DNA of 63,561 bases, the filler included, from Octopus bimaculoides (lineage: Eukaryota), in assembly GCF_001194135.2 (NCBI RefSeq). It is 8 parts of 8 records of this genome, joined end to end, with 100 filler letters (N's around TTAATTAATTAA, not from the genome) between each part and the next. Parts side by side here need not be neighbours in the genome. Positions count along the whole stretch, not along the records: positions 14,786 to 32,485 come from NC_069008.1; 7 more parts are not named here. One strand, given 5' to 3'. Numbering within the stretch: position 1 is the stretch's first letter; the number at the start of each line of letters is the position of its first letter. The translations under genes were made by a program, and so were the position numbers. Shown piece after piece: positions 17,646-32,485 of the stretch. The notes beneath the pieces are model-generated. The model worked only from the letters and a program-made list of their open reading frames with translations. It searched no databases and was not told where the DNA came from.

Positions 17646-18309
17646 ATCGTCTAGTTAGAATAGAGGCAGCTGACGAAGGATTAATTCCAAGTGGCTGTTT
17701 TCCTGTGTTCGTTCCGTTGTCTGTAGTTCATTGTTCTAACGTCCTGTACCCTGATATGCATCTATATACACATGTAGATGTAAGTATGTACATATATGTA
17801 TGTATACATGCATATATATTCTTTGTATTATATATATATATATATCTACATATACACGATGTGGAATGTGTGAATTATTGCCTTTTTATACATCAAGTTC
17901 CGATACATTCGTAATACACACCATCTGAAAGGTATTTGTTGTACGACTTATTTTAAAATATCCAGCTTTTACACGGAGGTAGTTATATCCAAATCTGTTT
18001 AATTCATTAATTTTTGGACAGTGCTGGAAGGATAGAAATAATATTGATGTCTGACAAGCGATATCAAAACATTAAAAGTTAGTGGAATCAGCAAAAGTAT
18101 ACAATATTAATACATGTAATGCTTTCGAGCTTTAATACTTACAGAAATGATGTTTTATGTGAGACATTGTCGTAAAAAAGGGTGAAGTTGTTGGAAGAAA
18201 ACAAAGCGGAGGAAAACAATAAGATGGAATCAAAACGGAAATGGGGAAATAAACAATCCTTTTGCGCATGCGTGCTCAAACATGCATATATATATATATA
18301 TATATTTTT

Positions 18310-20029: not shown

Positions 20030-20680
20030 TCAGGTCATCCCATAAGTTCTGTCTGAATTTTAAATAAAGAAAACAAGTGATCAAATGTTATATTTAATTG
20101 AAATTTAATCATCAATGTACTTTCCCTGATTATCTATGGCTTCTGTCTATTTACAAGCTTTTTAATTCCATCAATGTAAAACTCTTGGTTTTAAAATGAA
20201 GAACTCTGAAATGTCAGTTTTGACCTCCTCCTGGCTTGTGAAAGTTATGTCCCCGAAATGATTCTGTAAACTACGAAACAAATGGTAGTCTGAAGGAGCA
20301 AGGTCGGGAGAATAAGGTGGATGAGGAATCTTTTCCCAACCAAGTTCTTCGATTTTCTGTGATGTGATCTTTGCAGTGTGAGGTTGCGCATTGTTCTGAT
20401 GAAACATCACTCCTTTTCAATTCACTAAAGCGGCTCTTTTTTTCTTCAAAGCTTGGTTCAAATGCTCTAATTGCTGACAGTAGACTTGAGCATTGATTGT
20501 TGCATTAGGTGGTAACAATTCAAAGTGAATTACTCCTTTGCAATCCCACCAGATAGAGAGAACCTTTTTCCCATGAAGTTACCTTCTCGGTTGTGGTTGA
20601 GCTTTTTCCCTTTTACCAATCCACTGTTTATGATGTTTAACATTTCAATAGAAGAACCATTTTTCGTCACCAGTCACAAT
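20030..20680 (-). mobile_element. 5'-truncated mariner (DD34D catalytic half plus 3' TIR)
   Basis: IVTGDEKW...WWDCKGVIHFELL...VMFHQNNAQPH...HPPYSPDLAPSDYHLFRSL; internal stops; TA at 20028-20029 followed by TIR-like TCAGGTCATCCCATAAGTTCTG. Confidence 0.9.
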
Positions 20681-21825
20681 TAAATGCTATGCTTTTGCTT
20701 GTGTCTTCTTAAAAGATTATTATATACAAAAGATTTCCCACATATTTTACAAGAATACGGTTTTTCTCCGGTGTGATCTCGTTTGTGAACCACAAGACTG
20801 GAATTCTGAGTAAACGACTTTCCACATATTTCACAATGATATGGTTTCTCTCCAGTATGGACTCTTTTGTGTCTGATTAAATCACTGTTGGACACAAAAG
20901 ACTTTCCACATATTTGACAATGATATGGTTTTTCTCCAGTGTGGATTCTTCTGTGCTTTGTTAAGACAGAGTGAGAAACAAAAGATTTTCCACATATTTC
21001 ACAATGAAACAGTTTTTCTCCAGTGTGACTACGTTTATGGACTGTAAGTTTTGAATTCTGAATAAAAGACTTTCCACATATTTCACAGGAAAACAATTTC
21101 TCTCCAGTGTGTATTTTTTTGTGAACTATAAGATTAGAATTATCAGCAAATGCTTTCCCACACGTTTCACAATGGAAAGGTTTCTCTCCAGTGTGGGTTC
21201 TTTTGTGTCTATTCAAGTCACTATTACAGACAAACGATTTTCCACATATTTCACAAGGATATGGTTTTTCACCAATGTGTACGCCTTTGTGTCTTGTTAA
21301 TTTACACTTAGAAACGAAAGATTTTCCACACATTTCACAGTGGAAGGGTTTTTCTCCAGTGTGTATGCTTTTGTGGTTTGTTAAGACACACTTAGAAACA
21401 AACGACTTCTCACACACTTCACAGTGAAACAGTTTTTCACCAGTATGACTACGTATGTGGTTAACAAGATGAGAATTCTGACTGAAAGACTTTCCACATA
21501 TCTCACAATGATATGGCTTTTCTCCAGTGTGTATTCTTCTGTGTTTCATTAAATAACTTTTACAGGTAAAATATTTTCCACAGATTTCACAATGGAAGAG
21601 CCTTACCTTGTGGAGTATTTCTTTGTGCATCAAAACTTCATTTTCTGAAGAGAAAGTTTCCCCACAAATCTCACAACAATGTTCAGGAATGTGAACCTGT
21701 ACTGGTTGTTCTTTAATAATTATGTTACCATGTGAAGGTTTCTCACCACTACGTGTCTGTCTGACTGAATCTATATTGGTAAAAACAGCTGTTTTGGAAG
21801 TGTCTAAGAGAGTAACGTCCTCCAT
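20680..21825 (-). CDS. Single-exon C2H2 zinc-finger protein, 12 fingers (CEIC type), 381 aa
   Basis: Intact ATG-to-TAA ORF with 12 CxxC-12-HxxxH fingers and TGEKP-type linkers. Confidence 0.93.
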
Positions 21826-26899: not shown

Positions 26900-28010
26900 A
26901 GCTCGCCAAAGCATGCTTAATGTTCCGAGTGGCAGGGGCGCTTCAAAAGTGGAAGAACATTCCTGGAAGATGATGAGTGATCTGGAAGGCCTGCCACGAG
27001 CGTCACCCCCAGAACTGTAGAGAAAATTCATCAACTCATCGATGAAAGTAAACAAAGTTTGTTCTTTTTTAGAAGCGTTGAGATGTATTGTAAGATACAG
27101 AAATAAATTTATTTCTCAAACGCATGATAATGCTATAAATAGCTTGATCAGGATAAATTATCCATTTATTGCAGAAAAATATGTTACTGGCCAGCCATGA
27201 GACTCAAACTCACATCTCTGTNNNNNNNNNNNNNNNNNNNNNNNNNNNNNNNNNNNNNNNNNNNNNNNNNNNNNNNNNNNNNNNNNNNNNNNNNNNNNNN
27301 NNNNNNNNNNNNNNNNNNNNNNNNNNNNNNNNNNNNNNNNNNNNNNNAATCACAGAGATGTGAGTTCGGGTCTCATGGCTGGCCAGTAACGTATTTTTCT
27401 GCATTATATGGATAATTTATCCTGATCAAGCTATTTATAGCATTATCACGCGTTTGAGAAATAAATTTATTTCTGTATCTTTCATCAACTTTTGCATGAG
27501 GATCGTTGGAGGACAATCACTGACATTGCTGATGTTGTTTGTCTGTCATATGGGTCTGTGCAGGCAATCCTAATGTCTGAATTGAACATGTGGCATGTCT
27601 CTGCCAAGCTTGTCCCCCACCTGCTGACCACTGAGCAGAAAGAACATCACATTGAAGTCTTACAAGATCTCCGTCAGCATGCCACTGATGACACATCCTT
27701 GTCGAGGATCATCACCCTGTCATTGATTTCTCCTCACTTGTGAGTTTCTCTCCAAAAACAACATGGTTTTACTTCCACACTCATCCTATTCACCATATTT
27801 AGCCCCTGCAGACTTTAATCTTTCCCCCAGGATGAAAGTGCAGCTCAAAGGTTGCAGTTTTAACATTGTTGTCAAGATCTTGAGTGAATTGCAGAAGGTC
27901 CTTGACTCACTTATGGAAAACAACTTCCAGGCCAGATTCCAAAAGTGGCAGGAAAACTGGGGGGGGCCAGTGTATTGCTGTGCAAGGTGACTATTTCAAA
28001 AGAGATTAGG
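26900..28010 (+). mobile_element. Internally deleted mariner, split by fold-back element copy 1
   Basis: RFKSGRTFLEDDE*SGRPATSVTPRTVEKIHQL | LHEDRWRTITDIA...SAKLVPHLLT...SRIIT and PHSSYSPYLAPADF; the reading frame resumes across the insertion. Confidence 0.85.
27037..27480. mobile_element. tRNA fold-back element family A, copy 1 (centre in gap)
   Basis: Inverted arms on either side of the gap; 10-bp TSD TTCATCAACT at 27027-27036 and 27481-27490; homologous to 30111-30579. Confidence 0.85.
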
Positions 28011-28017
28011 TTAAAAC

Positions 28018-28227
28018 TTAACCCTTTAGCATTTAAACTGGCCATATCCGGCCAAAAGTAAAACTGGCCAGATCTGGTCTCTCACACCAACCCTACAATA
28101 TCGTTTTAAAAATTAACAGCTACCTCATCAAAATCTCATAGCTACGAGATAATGCATGATTAGTTCAAAATAATGTGGATAAAAAAGCATTAACTATGGC
28201 AGAATAATGTGAACACTAAAGGGTTAA
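28018..28227. mobile_element. piggyBac-like MITE
   Basis: TTAA|CCCTTTAGCATT...CACTAAAGGG|TTAA; related copies at 30783-30990 and 48570-49045. Confidence 0.75.
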
Positions 28228-28339
28228 GCAAATATGTTATTTTCTATTAAAGATAACTAGTCCGGGAATTTTTTGATACCATCTCATAATTGTAAGCAAG
28301 CGTGACTGTCATATAAGCTATGTCATTCATTCCCAATAT

Positions 28340-28500
28340 GCTGCAATAACATATCTGGCCATGAGGGAAAGTTACTTTGCTTTGAAACAGGTGAGGGGTG
28401 GTGACAGGAAGGGCATCCAACCATAGAAAATCTGTTTCAATAAAACTCTGTTTGACCCATTCAAGTATGGAAATAGCAGGAAGCTGATGATGATGATTAT
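28340..28500 (+). mobile_element. RTE-tail repeat, degenerate
   Basis: GACAGGAAGGGCATCCAACCATAGAAAA...GACCCATTCAAGTATGGAA...(GAT)n. Confidence 0.55.
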
Positions 28501-28949
28501 ATAATGCATATATTTCGAAAGTAGAGAGAAAAATTGTCCTCATACATTCTTATTTCTATACAGTTTATCTGTATAAAAATAATCTAGTATAATTTGTCCA
28601 GTTGTTTTAAGTATCTTCTATATCTTATATTCTTGTTTATTATTTCAGATTATCTGAAGGCGTTGGCATCAAAGGTTCATCAAGGATCATCAATATTTAT
28701 CAACTTTTAAAGATTAAAGAAGTTATGCTTAACAAATATATCTCATTTGATATTATTTGTAAACTGAGATTAGTAGTAATTTTATCTACCTCCTTATCTT
28801 GGATATGTACAACATGAATTTTCGAACTGAATTTAGATTACAAGGAGTTTGCAACATATTAAGATATTTGCAAAGATTACAGTTGATGGGAAAATAGCAA
28901 AAAAAAATATATTTGTTTGGAATCAATACAAACAAAAAGAAGAAAAATT

Positions 28950-29969
28950 ATGGAAAAAGAATTATGTGAAGACAACCTCAAGTTTCAAGCAAAATCTAAA
29001 AGAATTGAATTTCCTGGTGATAGCAAGGAAGAAAGAGTGAAAACATCATTCACTTGTGATATCTGTGGTAAATCATTATCTCAAAAATGCCATCTCACTA
29101 CACATAAACGTACTCATACAGGAGAGAAGCCTTATCATTGCGATATCTGTGGTAAATCATTCTCTGAAACTAGTTACCTAACTAAACATAAACGACTTCA
29201 TACAGGAGAGAATCCATATCAGTGTGATATCTGTGGTAAATCTTGCTCGGGAAGTACTGACTTAACTATTCATGTACGCACTCATACAGGAGAGAAGCCA
29301 TTTCACTGTGACATCTGTGGCAAATCATTCTCTCATGGAAATACACTGACTATACACAAACGTATTCATACAGGTGAAAAACCATACCACTGTGATATCT
29401 GTGGTAAATCATTCTCTGAAAAAGGTACCTTAACTATTCACAAACGTATTCACACAGGAGAGAAACCTTATTGTTGTGATATCTGTGGTAAATCATTCTC
29501 CCAAAGACCTCATTTAGCTGAACACAAACGTATTCATACAGGTGAGAAAGCACATCACTGTGATGTCTGCAGTAAATCATTCTTTAGAAGTAGTGACTTA
29601 ACGGCGCACAAACGTATTCATACAGGAGAGAGGCCATATCACTGTGATATCTGCGGTAGATCATTCTCTCATAATCATAATTTAACCAAACACAAACGTA
29701 TTCATGCAGGAGAGACACCATATCTTTGTGATATCTGTGGTAAATCATTCTCTCAATTATATAATTTGACTACACACAAACGTATTCACACAGGAGAGAA
29801 ACCATATAATTGTGATATCTGTGGTAAATCATTCTCTGAAAATAGTACCTTAACAACTCACAAACGTATCCATACAGGTGAGAGTCCATATTGCTGTGAC
29901 ATCTGTGGGAAATCATTCTCTCGTAAAAGGAACTTAACTACTCATATAGGTATTCATTCACAACAGTAA
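28950..29969 (+). CDS. Single-exon C2H2 zinc-finger protein, 11 fingers (CDIC type), 339 aa from first ATG
   Basis: Intact [11 protein letters not shown]...; 11 fingers with TGE[K/N/R/S]P-type linkers; the ORF track's 28917 start is a TTG. Confidence 0.93.
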
Positions 29970-30256
29970 CTACACCAATGCCAACATTCTGATTGAAGTT
30001 AATGCTGTGCTGCAAGCTCACTACTGCATTTATCTTGATAACATTTTCCCCTTTTCTTGTTGGTATATGTAGTTATTTTACGAATGCTAGTTCTAGACAG
30101 TATTCATAAACGATGAAAGTAAACAAAGTTTGTATTTAGAAGCATTGACATGTATTGGTAAGATACAGAATTAAATTTATATCTCAAACGCGTGATAATG
30201 CTATAAATAGCATGATCAGGATAAATTATCCATATAAGGCAGAAAAATACGTTACT

Positions 30257-30328
30257 GGCCAGCCATGAGACTCGAACTCACATCTCTGTGATTACATGTC
30301 AAGTGTTTTACCATTAAACTAAACTGCC
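30257..30328 (-). tRNA. tRNA-Thr(TGT)-like pseudo-tRNA, left arm of the fold-back
   Basis: Inverted copy of 30428-30499 with one D-arm difference. Confidence 0.6.
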
Positions 30329-30427
30329 CAGCAACGAATTCTTCTGCAATTTTAGAACTTATAAATTTAGCTTCATAAGACGCTAACAATAAATTCAACT
30401 TTAAAATTGCAGAAGAATTCGTTGCTG

Positions 30428-30499
30428 GGCAGTTTAGTCTAATGGTAAAACACTTGACATGTAATCACAGAGATGTGAGTTCGAGTCTCATGGCTGGCC
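30428..30499 (+). tRNA. tRNA-Thr(TGT)-like pseudo-tRNA, right arm of the fold-back
   Basis: Manual cloverleaf: acceptor GGCAGTT/GGCTGGC (6 of 7 pairs), D-arm GTCT-AATGGTA-AAAC, anticodon loop CATGTAA, T-arm GTGAG-TTCGAGT-CTCAT; A at position 33 and a bulged C suggest it is non-functional as a tRNA. Confidence 0.65.
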
Positions 30500-30782
30500 A
30501 GTAACGTATTTTTCTACATTATATGCATAATTTATCCTGATCACGCTATTTATAGCATTATCACGTGTTTGAGAAATAAAGTATTCATAAAATTACTCTG
30601 TATACCAATTAGAAACAAAAAAATCAGTTTGTTTATCACATTTAATATAAATACATCTTGATAAAGAAAATTTTCTGCAGTCCATCTGCACATGTACTGT
30701 GTTTAAAAACAATGTTCATAGACATCGTAAAAGTGAATACTCACCTGTCATTTTACTATTTTATTAGTGCAGGTATTTCTCA

Positions 30783-30990
30783 TTAAGCCTTTATCCTTTA
30801 AACTGGCCATATCCGGCTCAGATATTCTAGCTGTTTAATTTTCAAACTGTGCAGATCTGACATCTCATGCCTGCCATAAAACATCATTCGAAAATACACA
30901 ATCACATCATCAAAATCTCAAAGCTACAAGATAATGCATGATTAATTGAAAACAATGTGAATAAATAAGTATCACATTTGACAGTAAATT
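30783..30990. mobile_element. piggyBac-like MITE, degenerate
   Basis: TTTAAACTGGCCATATCCGG...CAAAATCTCAAAGCTACAAGATAATGCATGATT as in 28018-28227. Confidence 0.65.
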
Positions 30991-32134: not shown

Positions 32135-32485
32135 GGGGTTACTCTTTTACTTGTTTCAGTCTTTTTAACTGTGGCCATGCTGGAGCACCGCCTTTAGTCA
32201 AGCAAATCGACCCCAGGACTTATTCTTTGGAAACCTAGTACTTATTCTATCGGTCTCTTTTTGCCGAACCACTAAGTTACGGGGACGTAAACACACCAGC
32301 ATCGGTTGTCAAGCGATGTTGGGGGGACAAACACAGACACACAAACACATACACACATATATATATATATATATACATATATACGACGGGCTTCTTTCAG
32401 TTTCTGTCTACCAAATCCACTCACAAGGCTTTGGTCGGCCCAAGGTGCCACGCAGTGGGAATGAACCTGGGACAATGTGGTTGGT
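32135..32485 (-). mobile_element. SINE family 2, near full length
   Basis: Tail, internal (CA)(TA) microsatellite, and head CAAGGTGCCACGCAGTGGGAATGAACC. Confidence 0.9.

What the first reader, a model, noticed from the sequence alone, without database searches (positions are those of the whole stretch)
27027..30591. Fold-back mobile element with two back-to-back tRNA-Thr-like heads (family A)
Copy 2 is a complete 469-bp hairpin with ~178-bp arms of about 96% identity. Each arm has an outward-facing tRNA-Thr(TGT)-like sequence with A and B boxes, then a tail with three mini-palindromes (GGATAAATTATCC, GCTATAAATAGC, AGAAATAAATTTATTTCT). It moved as a unit: TSDs are 10 bp (copy 1, splitting a mariner ORF) and 12 bp (copy 2). 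The left end is fixed (CGATGAAAG) while the right end differs by ~16 nt between copies. An ordinary SINE starts at its tRNA head and a MITE has symmetric ends with fixed-length TSDs; this fits neither.
Basis: partly seen in the sequence, partly recalled or inferred. Interest (0 to 1): 0.8.

Follow-up and report, generated by a model that had tools for sequence, protein, structure and literature searches.

The report
Hairpin-shaped tRNA-derived retroposon in octopus
Two copies of a roughly 470-490 bp octopus mobile element, each made of two back-to-back tRNA-like units, were inserted as whole hairpins, most likely by reverse transcription at the target site, and not by the cut-and-paste route of a fold-back DNA transposon.

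Summary
The piece is Octopus bimaculoides chromosome CM046628.1, inside a C2H2 zinc-finger gene cluster.

- **Copy 2** (30111-30579, 469 bp) has 178-179-nt arms, 96% complementary, around a unique 47-nt spacer.
- **tRNA-like units:** each arm carries an outward-reading tRNA-Thr(UGU)-like unit. Rfam scores are 36.2 and 29.9 bits against a threshold of 29. ARAGORN calls no tRNA.
- **Copy 1** (27037-27480) has the same arms around an assembly gap.
- **Gap test:** removing copy 1 plus one 10-bp repeat restores a single mariner reading frame, colinear with Mos1. Both sides of the gap therefore belong to one insertion.
- **Ends and duplications:** target duplications are 10 and 12 bp. The left end is shared; the right ends differ by 16 nt.

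The asymmetry fits target-primed reverse transcription, which gives one defined end, one variable end and duplications of variable length. The closest documented architecture is that of Penelope-like element insertions: inverted copies, a one-sided "tail", variable duplications and assembly breaks. No hammerhead ribozyme was found, and no partner element could be tested.

Only two copies could be reached, so I could not tell whether the dimer forms at each insertion or descends from a dimeric master. Repbase and Dfam could not be checked. Interest is moderate.

The parts
27027..27036 (.). Copy 1, left target-site duplication TTCATCAACT
   Evidence: Exact repeat of 27481-27490. It is part of the mariner reading frame.
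27037..27092 (-). Copy 1, left-only terminal extension (CAT+CGATGAAAGTAAAC...), with no counterpart in the right arm. It starts with the palindrome CATCGATG and contains the palindrome AACAAAGTTTGTT.
   Evidence: Four-arm alignment; arm limits; palindromes.
27093..27221 (-). Copy 1, left arm up to the gap: tail with three mini-palindromes, A5 (T5 on the minus strand) and the 3' part of the tRNA-like unit
27222..27347 (.). Assembly gap hiding the centre of copy 1. It corresponds to 30290-30462 of copy 2, which is 173 nt.
27348..27480 (+). Copy 1, right arm from the gap outward. It ends ...TTTCTGTATCT, 16 nt further out than copy 2.
27481..27490 (.). Copy 1, right target-site duplication TTCATCAACT
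   Evidence: Excision restores the frame.
30099..30110 (.). Copy 2, left target-site duplication AGTATTCATAAA
30111..30176 (-). Copy 2, left-only terminal extension (CGATGAAAGTAAAC...). [quoted passage not shown]
   Evidence: (D4).
30177..30354 (-). Copy 2, left arm: tail, trailer with T5 (A5 at 30243-30247 on +), tRNA-Thr-like unit 30257-30328 (-), leader 30328-30347
30355..30401 (.). Copy 2, unique 47-nt AT-rich spacer between the arms (the hairpin loop). It has no match elsewhere in the reachable sequence.
30402..30579 (+). Copy 2, right arm: leader 30409-30428, tRNA-Thr-like unit 30428-30499 (+), T5 at 30509-30513, and a tail truncated inside the 18-nt palindrome (...GAGAAATAA)
30580..30591 (.). 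Copy 2, right target-site duplication AGTATTCATAAA

Best explanation
This is a non-autonomous retroposon built from a tRNA-Thr-derived unit. Each arm consists of a leader, a tRNA-like unit, a trailer with T5, and a tail with small stem-loops. [quoted passage not shown]

**Shown**
- Both copies were inserted as whole dimers between exact target duplications of 10 and 12 bp.
- One end is the same in both copies: ...AAACTTTGTTTACTTTCATCG on the minus strand.
- The other end falls at different positions, 16 nt apart.
- The left end carries 56-66 nt that the right arm lacks.
- The four arms differ only by private substitutions.

**Inferred**
- The shared left end is where reverse transcription of the sense RNA (the strand on which the tRNA-like unit reads as a tRNA) was primed by the nicked plus strand of the target.
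- The right arm was made in the same integration event. Either the second target strand primed on the same kind of RNA at an internal site in or near the 18-nt stem-loop, as a Penelope-like element enzyme does in vitro, or the first cDNA snapped back on itself.
- This gives two identical arms at birth, a one-sided extension and a variable right end.

**Confidence**
- That the element moves by TPRT-type retroposition and integrates as a dimer: about 0.65 (the confidence given for this field).
- That the dimer is made anew at each insertion: about 0.35.
- That it is instead copied from a dimeric hairpin master (first rival): about 0.3.
For: **Integration as one unit**
- Exact duplications of 10 and 12 bp flank the whole dimers.
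- Precise excision of copy 1 restores a mariner frame colinear with Mos1.

**Ends**
- The left terminus is shared (D4).
- The right ends differ by 16 nt. Each abuts its duplication directly, so the truncation dates from the insertion itself.
- At the right junctions, 1-2 nt could belong to either the arm or the target (read).
- The right ends lie 6 nt beyond the 18-nt palindrome (copy 1) and at its centre (copy 2).

**Arms**
- In the 108-nt core shared by the four arms, all 12 substitutions are private, and 4 of them are at CpG.
- Arms of one copy (94.4% and 95.4%) are no more alike than arms of different copies (91.7-97.2%).
- So the arms were identical when each copy was born.

**Units**
- The tRNA-like units have intact A and B box regions.

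**Precedents in the literature**
- Penelope-like element insertions often carry an inverted 5'-truncated copy that forms inverted repeats, a 30-40-bp tail at one end, duplications of variable length, and problems for short-read assembly (PMC8557442).
- A purified Penelope-like element protein cleaves and extends both DNA strands and starts reverse transcription at two internal RNA sites, which explains the tail (PMC11167929).
- cDNA snap-back junctions have been observed in R2 TPRT (PMC11371274, PMC11331408).
- Naiad Penelope-like element remnants occur in Octopus spp. (PMC8557442), and RTE-clade LINEs showing evidence of recent activity are reported in O. vulgaris and O. bimaculoides (PMC9115989).
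Against: - Only two copies were available, and the centre of copy 1 is unread.
- No hammerhead ribozyme or other Penelope-like element signature was found.
- No reverse transcriptase ORF lies in the reachable region.
- The 3' end could not be compared with any octopus LINE or Penelope-like element.
- A T5 run 10 nt after each tRNA-like unit should stop Pol III before the tail. The arms also include 26 nt upstream of the tRNA-like unit, plus a 47-nt spacer. The template RNA is therefore not a simple Pol III SINE transcript.
- In Penelope-like elements the inverted copy is usually truncated at the inner junction. Here the inner ends are symmetric.
- With two copies, a fixed 10-bp duplication plus a 2-nt coincidence in copy 2 cannot be excluded (my estimate is about 0.06-0.1).
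Confidence: 0.65

Rival explanations
1. Hairpin master. A dimeric source copy is transcribed from the right end leftward (minus-strand RNA). That hairpin RNA is reverse transcribed by a LINE enzyme from its fixed 3' end, ...CUUUCAUCG. The variable right end is ordinary 5' truncation. This shares the TPRT core of the best explanation and differs only in when the dimer arose.
For: - It is the simplest reading of a fixed 3' end, a variable 5' end and variable duplications.
- Both copies have the same architecture.
- The unique 47-nt spacer and the 26-nt leader inside the arms are easily explained as parts of a fixed family sequence.
- RTE-clade LINEs showing evidence of recent activity are reported in O. 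vulgaris and O. bimaculoides (PMC9115989).
Against: - There is no internal promoter for a transcript that starts at the right end. The tRNA-like promoters point outward.
- The template would be a 179-bp near-perfect RNA duplex (-313 kcal/mol). I judge that a poor template and an obvious target for dsRNA pathways (my inference).
- No substitution specific to the left or right arm is shared by the two copies. The master would therefore have had perfectly identical arms.
Confidence: 0.3
2. Fold-back DNA transposon or MITE with long terminal inverted repeats, moved by a transposase such as a Mutator-like enzyme with 9-11-bp duplications. The copies seen here would be damaged.
For: - Long inverted repeats and small subterminal palindromes that could be protein-binding sites.
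- Duplications near the Mutator range (from my own knowledge of that superfamily).
- A hypothetical full-length element could be symmetric if the right arm once extended to CGATGAAAG.
Against: - The ends are not equivalent. The left 56-66 nt are absent on the right, and the two right ends differ by 16 nt.
- Each truncated end directly abuts an exact duplication, so the truncated forms are what integrated.
- The duplications are 10 and 12 bp.
- A transposase needs both termini.
Confidence: 0.1
3. Not one unit. Either two independent monomer SINE insertions happened to land head to head, or the palindromes are assembly artefacts.
For: - Copy 1 has an assembly gap at its centre.
- Palindromes can be generated by assembly errors.
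Against: - Exact duplications bracket the dimers, not the single arms.
- Two loci show the same arrangement.
- The arms of copy 2 differ at 7 positions, so it is not a mirrored read.
- The flanks of copy 1 are contiguous in the mariner frame.
Confidence: 0.03

Closest known systems
Insertion architecture of Penelope-like elements (PLEs) and their non-autonomous derivatives (metazoan retrozymes)
   Same: - Retroposed by TPRT.
- Insertions often carry an inverted copy that forms inverted repeats.
- An extension is present at only one end.
- Duplications vary in length.
- Short-read assemblies break at them (PMC8557442, PMC8969392).
- The enzyme extends both strands and uses alternative internal start sites (PMC11167929).
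   Different: - No hammerhead ribozyme, no tandem pseudo-LTR, and no demonstrated similarity to any Penelope-like element.
- The one-sided extension is 56-66 nt, not 30-40.
- The inner ends of the arms are symmetric, not truncated.
- The core is tRNA-derived.
tRNA-derived SINEs (SINE2/tRNA), including the octopus OK, OR1 and OR2 families (Ohshima and Okada 1994, cited in PMC4824008)
   Same: - A tRNA-related unit with A and B boxes.
- Short and non-coding.
- Variable duplications and a defined 3' end.
   Different: - The tRNA-like unit is not at the 5' end of the inserted unit.
- It is followed by T5.
- It is preceded by a 26-nt leader that pairs with the trailer.
- The element integrates as a head-to-head dimer.
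- There is no A-rich or microsatellite tail.
- Sequence identity to OK, OR1 or OR2 could not be checked.
cDNA snap-back junctions in R2 TPRT (PMC11371274, PMC11331408) and L1 twin-priming inversions (the latter from my own knowledge: Ostertag and Kazazian 2001)
   Same: Inverted sequence is created at the 5' side of a TPRT insertion within a single integration event.
   Different: - Snap-back is a minority outcome in R2, whereas here it is seen in both copies.
- Twin priming inverts an adjacent, non-overlapping segment. It does not duplicate the same 179 nt.
Fold-back DNA transposons (Drosophila FB, Galileo) and hairpin MITEs (from my own knowledge)
   Same: Long inverted repeats and a hairpin-forming sequence.
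   Different: Those have equivalent termini and fixed-length duplications. This element has neither.

Membership tests
tRNA-derived SINE (SINE2/tRNA) | tRNA-related region with Pol III A and B boxes | tested here: met
   The Rfam tRNA model matches full length at 36.2 and 29.9 bits against a gathering score of 29. The D and T arm regions align well to the tRNA consensus.
tRNA-derived SINE (SINE2/tRNA) | tRNA-related head at the 5' end of the unit, so that the internal promoter transcribes the whole element | tested here: not met
   The arms include 26 nt upstream of the tRNA-like unit and there is a 47-nt spacer. A T5 run lies 10 nt after the unit.
tRNA-derived SINE (SINE2/tRNA) | 3' tail shared with a partner LINE, or an A-rich or simple-repeat tail | not testable with these tools
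   No octopus LINE library and no Repbase or Dfam were available. The sequence itself shows no A-rich tail at either end.
tRNA-derived SINE (SINE2/tRNA) | Target duplications of variable length | tested here: met
   10 and 12 bp, but from only two copies.
MITE / fold-back DNA transposon | Equivalent terminal inverted repeats at both ends | tested here: not met
   The left 56-66 nt have no counterpart on the right, and the right ends differ by 16 nt between copies.
MITE / fold-back DNA transposon | Fixed-length duplication typical of a superfamily | tested here: inconclusive
   10 against 12 bp. A 2-nt coincidence cannot be excluded with two copies.
PLE insertion / PLE-dependent non-autonomous element | Inverted-repeat insertion structure with an extension at one end only and a variable duplication | tested here: met
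   The description of the family comes from PMC8557442 and PMC11167929. The extension here is longer (56-66 nt) than the published 30-40 bp.
PLE insertion / PLE-dependent non-autonomous element | Hammerhead ribozyme motif (canonical PLEs and retrozymes) | tested here: not met
   No hammerhead match at E up to 10 over the whole piece, or up to 1 over the arms. Naiad and Chlamys PLEs also lack it (PMC8557442).
PLE insertion / PLE-dependent non-autonomous element | Tandem pseudo-LTR arrangement, or sequence shared with an autonomous PLE | not testable with these tools
   No tandem copy is seen at these two loci. No octopus PLE sequences were available for comparison.
Functional tRNA-Thr gene | Canonical cloverleaf accepted by a tRNA finder | tested here: not met
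   ARAGORN finds no tRNA. The Rfam scores are barely above threshold, position 33 is A instead of U, and the anticodon stem has a bulge.
L1-type twin-priming inversion | The inverted and direct segments are adjacent, non-overlapping parts of the template | tested here: not met
   The two arms are copies of the same 178-179 nt.

The most novel reading that the evidence does not exclude
A tRNA-derived, SINE-like family whose every insertion is born as a hairpin. Its partner enzyme, a Penelope-like element or another reverse transcriptase, would prime on both strands of the target, or the cDNA would snap back. That would make it a ribozyme-free, tRNA-headed non-autonomous partner of such an enzyme. 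It would also be a dispersed source of ready-made 180-bp double-stranded RNA in a genome known for heavy A-to-I editing.
Probability: 0.25. Interest if true: 0.7.

Novelty: new variant of a known kind. Interest (0 to 1): 0.45.

Why it matters
SINEs make up about 4% of the O. bimaculoides genome, and their bursts have been linked in time to the C2H2 zinc-finger gene expansion (PMC12988792). Both copies here sit inside such a cluster. Copy 2 lies 141 bp downstream of a zinc-finger gene's stop codon.

- **Mechanism.** If the dimer is made at each insertion, the family would be a natural readout of both-strand priming or snap-back during target-primed reverse transcription. That step has so far been seen mainly in vitro or with engineered R2.
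- **Annotation.** Such a family would also widen what counts as a non-autonomous partner of Penelope-like elements.
- **Effect on host RNA.** Any transcript that crosses a copy folds into a roughly 180-bp near-perfect duplex. From general knowledge, that is a likely substrate for ADAR editing and small-RNA pathways, which are prominent in cephalopods.
- **Assembly.** These elements break short-read assemblies, as at 27222-27347, so they are probably under-counted.

Tried and rejected
**Searches for more copies**
- blastn of copy 2 against the piece and against both 10-kb extensions fetched from the chromosome (window-equivalent 10680-39969) found none. Much of the added sequence is N.
- An exact 18-mer scan of the metagenome and prokaryote genome collections gave only chance matches of 18-25 nt.
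- A protein search with the 48-aa ORF that crosses the loop found no hit.
- A search with the zinc-finger protein listed no octopus protein among the 120 hits shown, nearly all of them vertebrate zinc-finger proteins.
- The octopus proteins of this window are not in the searchable collection.
- A concatenated query (zinc-finger N-termini, mariner and an element ORF) gave one distant mariner-like Logan protein, which was of no use.

**Other checks that added nothing**
- Pfam on the mariner remnant gave only a sub-threshold HTH_32 match. The PDB search settled the mariner identity instead.
- The Rfam plant microRNA matches (MIR5512 at 70 bits against a threshold of 139, and MIR6445) are generic long-hairpin matches and I rejected them.
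- A literature search for 'inverted dimer' SINEs returned nothing.
- The octopus papers read here name no matching SINE family.

**Readings considered and rejected**
- Helitron or rolling-circle element, because target duplications are present.
- L1-type twin priming, because the arms are copies of the same segment.
- A genuine pair of tRNA genes, because ARAGORN is negative and the unit is clearly mobile.
- A plus-strand RNA template, because the right ends share no common terminus.
Full report
**Where the piece comes from.** The zinc-finger ORF at 28950-29969 is encoded, residue for residue, on Octopus bimaculoides chromosome CM046628.1 (assembly GCA_001194135.2). A second C2H2 gene lies at 20680-21825 (-). 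The finding therefore sits in an octopus C2H2 zinc-finger cluster. The bacterial-style tools are of limited use here. No eukaryotic repeat library (Repbase or Dfam) was available.

**The observation.**
- Copy 2 occupies 30111-30579 (469 bp). Its arms are 30176-30354 and 30402-30580, 179 nt and 96% complementary, 47 nt apart. The arms proper are 178 nt once the first duplication base is removed.
- The Rfam tRNA model matches each arm full length: 30257-30328 (-) at 36.2 bits and 30428-30499 (+) at 29.9 bits, against a threshold of 29.
- In both alignments the anticodon position reads UGU (Thr). Position 33 is A instead of U and the anticodon stem carries a bulge.
- ARAGORN calls no tRNA. These are tRNA-derived sequences, not working tRNA genes. 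Both read outward from the centre.
- The tail carries GGATAAATTATCC, GCTATAAATAGC and AGAAATAAATTTATTTCT. A fourth palindrome, ACAAAGTTTGT, lies near the left end.
- The enrichment of such palindromes over dinucleotide shuffles is modest (P about 0.006-0.03 in copy 1).
- The flanking direct repeats are exact: TTCATCAACT (27027-27036 and 27481-27490) and AGTATTCATAAA (30099-30110 and 30580-30591).
- Both copies share the left terminus CGATGAAAGTAAACAAAGTTTGT. Copy 1 has three more bases, making the terminal palindrome CATCGATG.
- The right arm of copy 1 extends 16 nt further out than that of copy 2.

**The assembly gap.** The sequence on the two sides of 27222-27347 aligns in register with the left and right arms of copy 2. 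The unread part corresponds to 30290-30462 of copy 2, which is 173 nt against the 126 N written. If the centre is the same, copy 1 would be about 491 bp.

An independent test comes from the host sequence. Deleting 27037-27490 (the element plus one duplication) fuses the flanks into one open frame...GRFKSGRTFLEDDE*SGRPATSVTPRTVEKIHQL|LHEDRWRTITDIADVV.... This frame aligns colinearly across the junction with Mos1 mariner transposase (E 2.4e-9). The two contigs that flank the gap are therefore true neighbours and belong to one insertion into a mariner remnant. What the centre of copy 1 looks like remains unknown.

**Further anatomy.**
1. The left end carries 56 nt (copy 1) or 66 nt (copy 2) that have no counterpart in the right arm.
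2. The arms start 26 nt upstream of the tRNA-like unit. This leader (GCAGAAGAATTCGTTGCTGG) can pair with the trailer (CCAGTAACGTATTTTTCTGC), so each unit sits on a stem of about 20 bp.
3. That trailer holds a T5 run 10 nt after the unit, which is a Pol III terminator by the usual rule.
4. The 47-nt spacer is unique in the reachable sequence.
5. In the 108-nt core common to all four arms there are 12 substitutions, and all are private to one arm (5, 1, 2 and 4). Four are at CpG.
6. Arms of one copy (94.4% and 95.4%) are no more alike than arms of different copies (91.7-97.2%). The four arms form a star, so the two arms were identical when each copy was born, and both copies are of similar age.
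7. As RNA the whole element folds into one hairpin of -313 kcal/mol (z = -38).

**What it is.** A cut-and-paste element needs two equivalent ends. Here the ends are not equivalent. The two right ends differ from each other, and each truncated right end directly abuts an exact duplication. The truncated forms are therefore what integrated.

A plus-strand RNA template is excluded because the right ends share no terminus. Three features together form the signature of target-primed reverse transcription: one defined end, one variable end, and duplications of 10 and 12 bp. On this reading, the nicked plus strand of the target primed on the 3' end of an RNA that reads ...AAACUUUGUUUACUUUCAUCG(AUG). 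That is the strand on which the left tRNA-like unit is in sense.

I put retroposition as a dimer at about 0.65. With two copies, a fixed 10-bp duplication plus a 2-nt coincidence cannot be ruled out.

**When the dimer arises.** There are two versions.

*Version A, hairpin master.* A dimeric source is transcribed from the right end, and the variable right end is 5' truncation. This accounts simply for the spacer and the leader. It has three weaknesses:
- It needs an outside promoter, because both tRNA-like promoters point outward.
- It needs a 179-bp RNA duplex as template.
- It needs a master with perfectly identical arms.

*Version B, dimer made at each integration from a sense monomer RNA.* Either the second target strand also primes, at an internal site, or the cDNA snaps back. 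This has published precedent:
- Penelope-like element insertions often have an adjacent inverted 5'-truncated copy that forms inverted repeats. They also have a 30-40-bp tail at one end only and duplications of variable length, and they disturb short-read assemblies (PMC8557442, PMC8969392).
- A purified Penelope-like element protein cleaves and extends both strands. It starts reverse transcription at two internal sites in a stem-loop, and the stretch between the sites is the tail (PMC11167929).
- Snap-back junctions have been seen in R2 insertions (PMC11371274, PMC11331408).
- In this element the right ends lie 6 nt beyond the 18-nt stem-loop (copy 1) and at its centre (copy 2). The left end lies 11-14 nt beyond another small stem-loop. 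This fits internal starts at stem-loops, but it rests on two copies only.

I prefer version B (about 0.35) slightly over version A (about 0.3). The reasons are that both of the two copies are dimers, that the arms were identical at birth, and that the extension is one-sided.

Against any Penelope-like element link:
- There is no hammerhead match and no tandem pseudo-LTR.
- No reverse transcriptase ORF lies nearby.
- The inner ends of the arms are symmetric.
- No partner sequence could be tested.

For both versions, the T5 run and the upstream leader mean the template is not a plain Pol III SINE transcript.

**Comparison with known kinds.** The element works like a retroposon and resembles Penelope-like element insertions in architecture. 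It resembles SINE2/tRNA elements in content. It fails defining features of each:
- A SINE has its head at the 5' end and no terminator inside the unit.
- A canonical Penelope-like element or retrozyme has a hammerhead ribozyme.
- A MITE or fold-back element has equivalent ends.
- Twin priming inverts a non-overlapping segment.

I therefore rate it a new variant of a known kind. The clear caveat is that the family may already be in Repbase or Dfam, or may correspond to one of the octopus SINEs of Ohshima and Okada (1994). Neither could be checked here.

**Limits.** Only two copies could be reached. No further copy lies in window-equivalent 10680-39969, much of which is N outside the piece. No octopus DNA is present in the metagenome or prokaryote collections. 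The protein routes to more octopus loci failed. The choice between versions A and B, the copy number and the partner enzyme all need a genome-wide census.

Noticed in passing
window 28018-28227; second copy 30784-30972: A roughly 200-bp piggyBac-type MITE: TTAA duplication on both sides and terminal inverted repeats CCCTTTAG...CTAAAGGG. It lies just 3' of the mariner remnant. A degenerate relative (72% identity over 190 nt) lies about 200 bp downstream of copy 2.
   Followed up: partly
window about 26900-27990: The host of copy 1 is a dead mariner-family element. It has in-frame stops and an internal deletion that removes most of the catalytic core. The N-terminal DNA-binding part and the C-terminal part (...LPHSSYSPYLAPADF...) both align to Mos1.
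   Followed up: partly
window 30409-30428 with 30498-30515, and the mirror segments 30328-30347 with 30241-30258: The leader and trailer of each tRNA-like unit are complementary over about 20 nt (17 identical positions plus 2 G-U pairs). The unit can therefore sit on a long stem, or the whole element can switch between one long hairpin and two stemmed cloverleaves. No explanation was tested.
   Followed up: partly
window 27037-27044: The left terminus of copy 1 is the perfect palindrome CATCGATG. Copy 2 lacks the first three bases. These could be an alternative start of reverse transcription, or bases added at the junction.
   Followed up: no
window 28950-29969 (+) and 20680-21825 (-): Two intact C2H2 zinc-finger genes (339 and 381 aa), with fingers in 84-bp periodic repeats (D1). 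Copy 2 lies 141 bp after the stop codon of the first, possibly in its 3' UTR. Neither protein is in the large searchable protein collection.
   Followed up: partly
window 17753-17863 and 32278-32409: Simple TA/TG-rich stretches give weak, sub-threshold matches to microRNA families rich in the same repeats (mir-297, mir-466, mir-3149). These are most likely low-complexity artefacts.
   Followed up: no
the four arms, 108-nt core: Four of the 12 private substitutions are CpG to TpG or CpA changes. This is consistent with methylation-driven decay of these copies.
   Followed up: no
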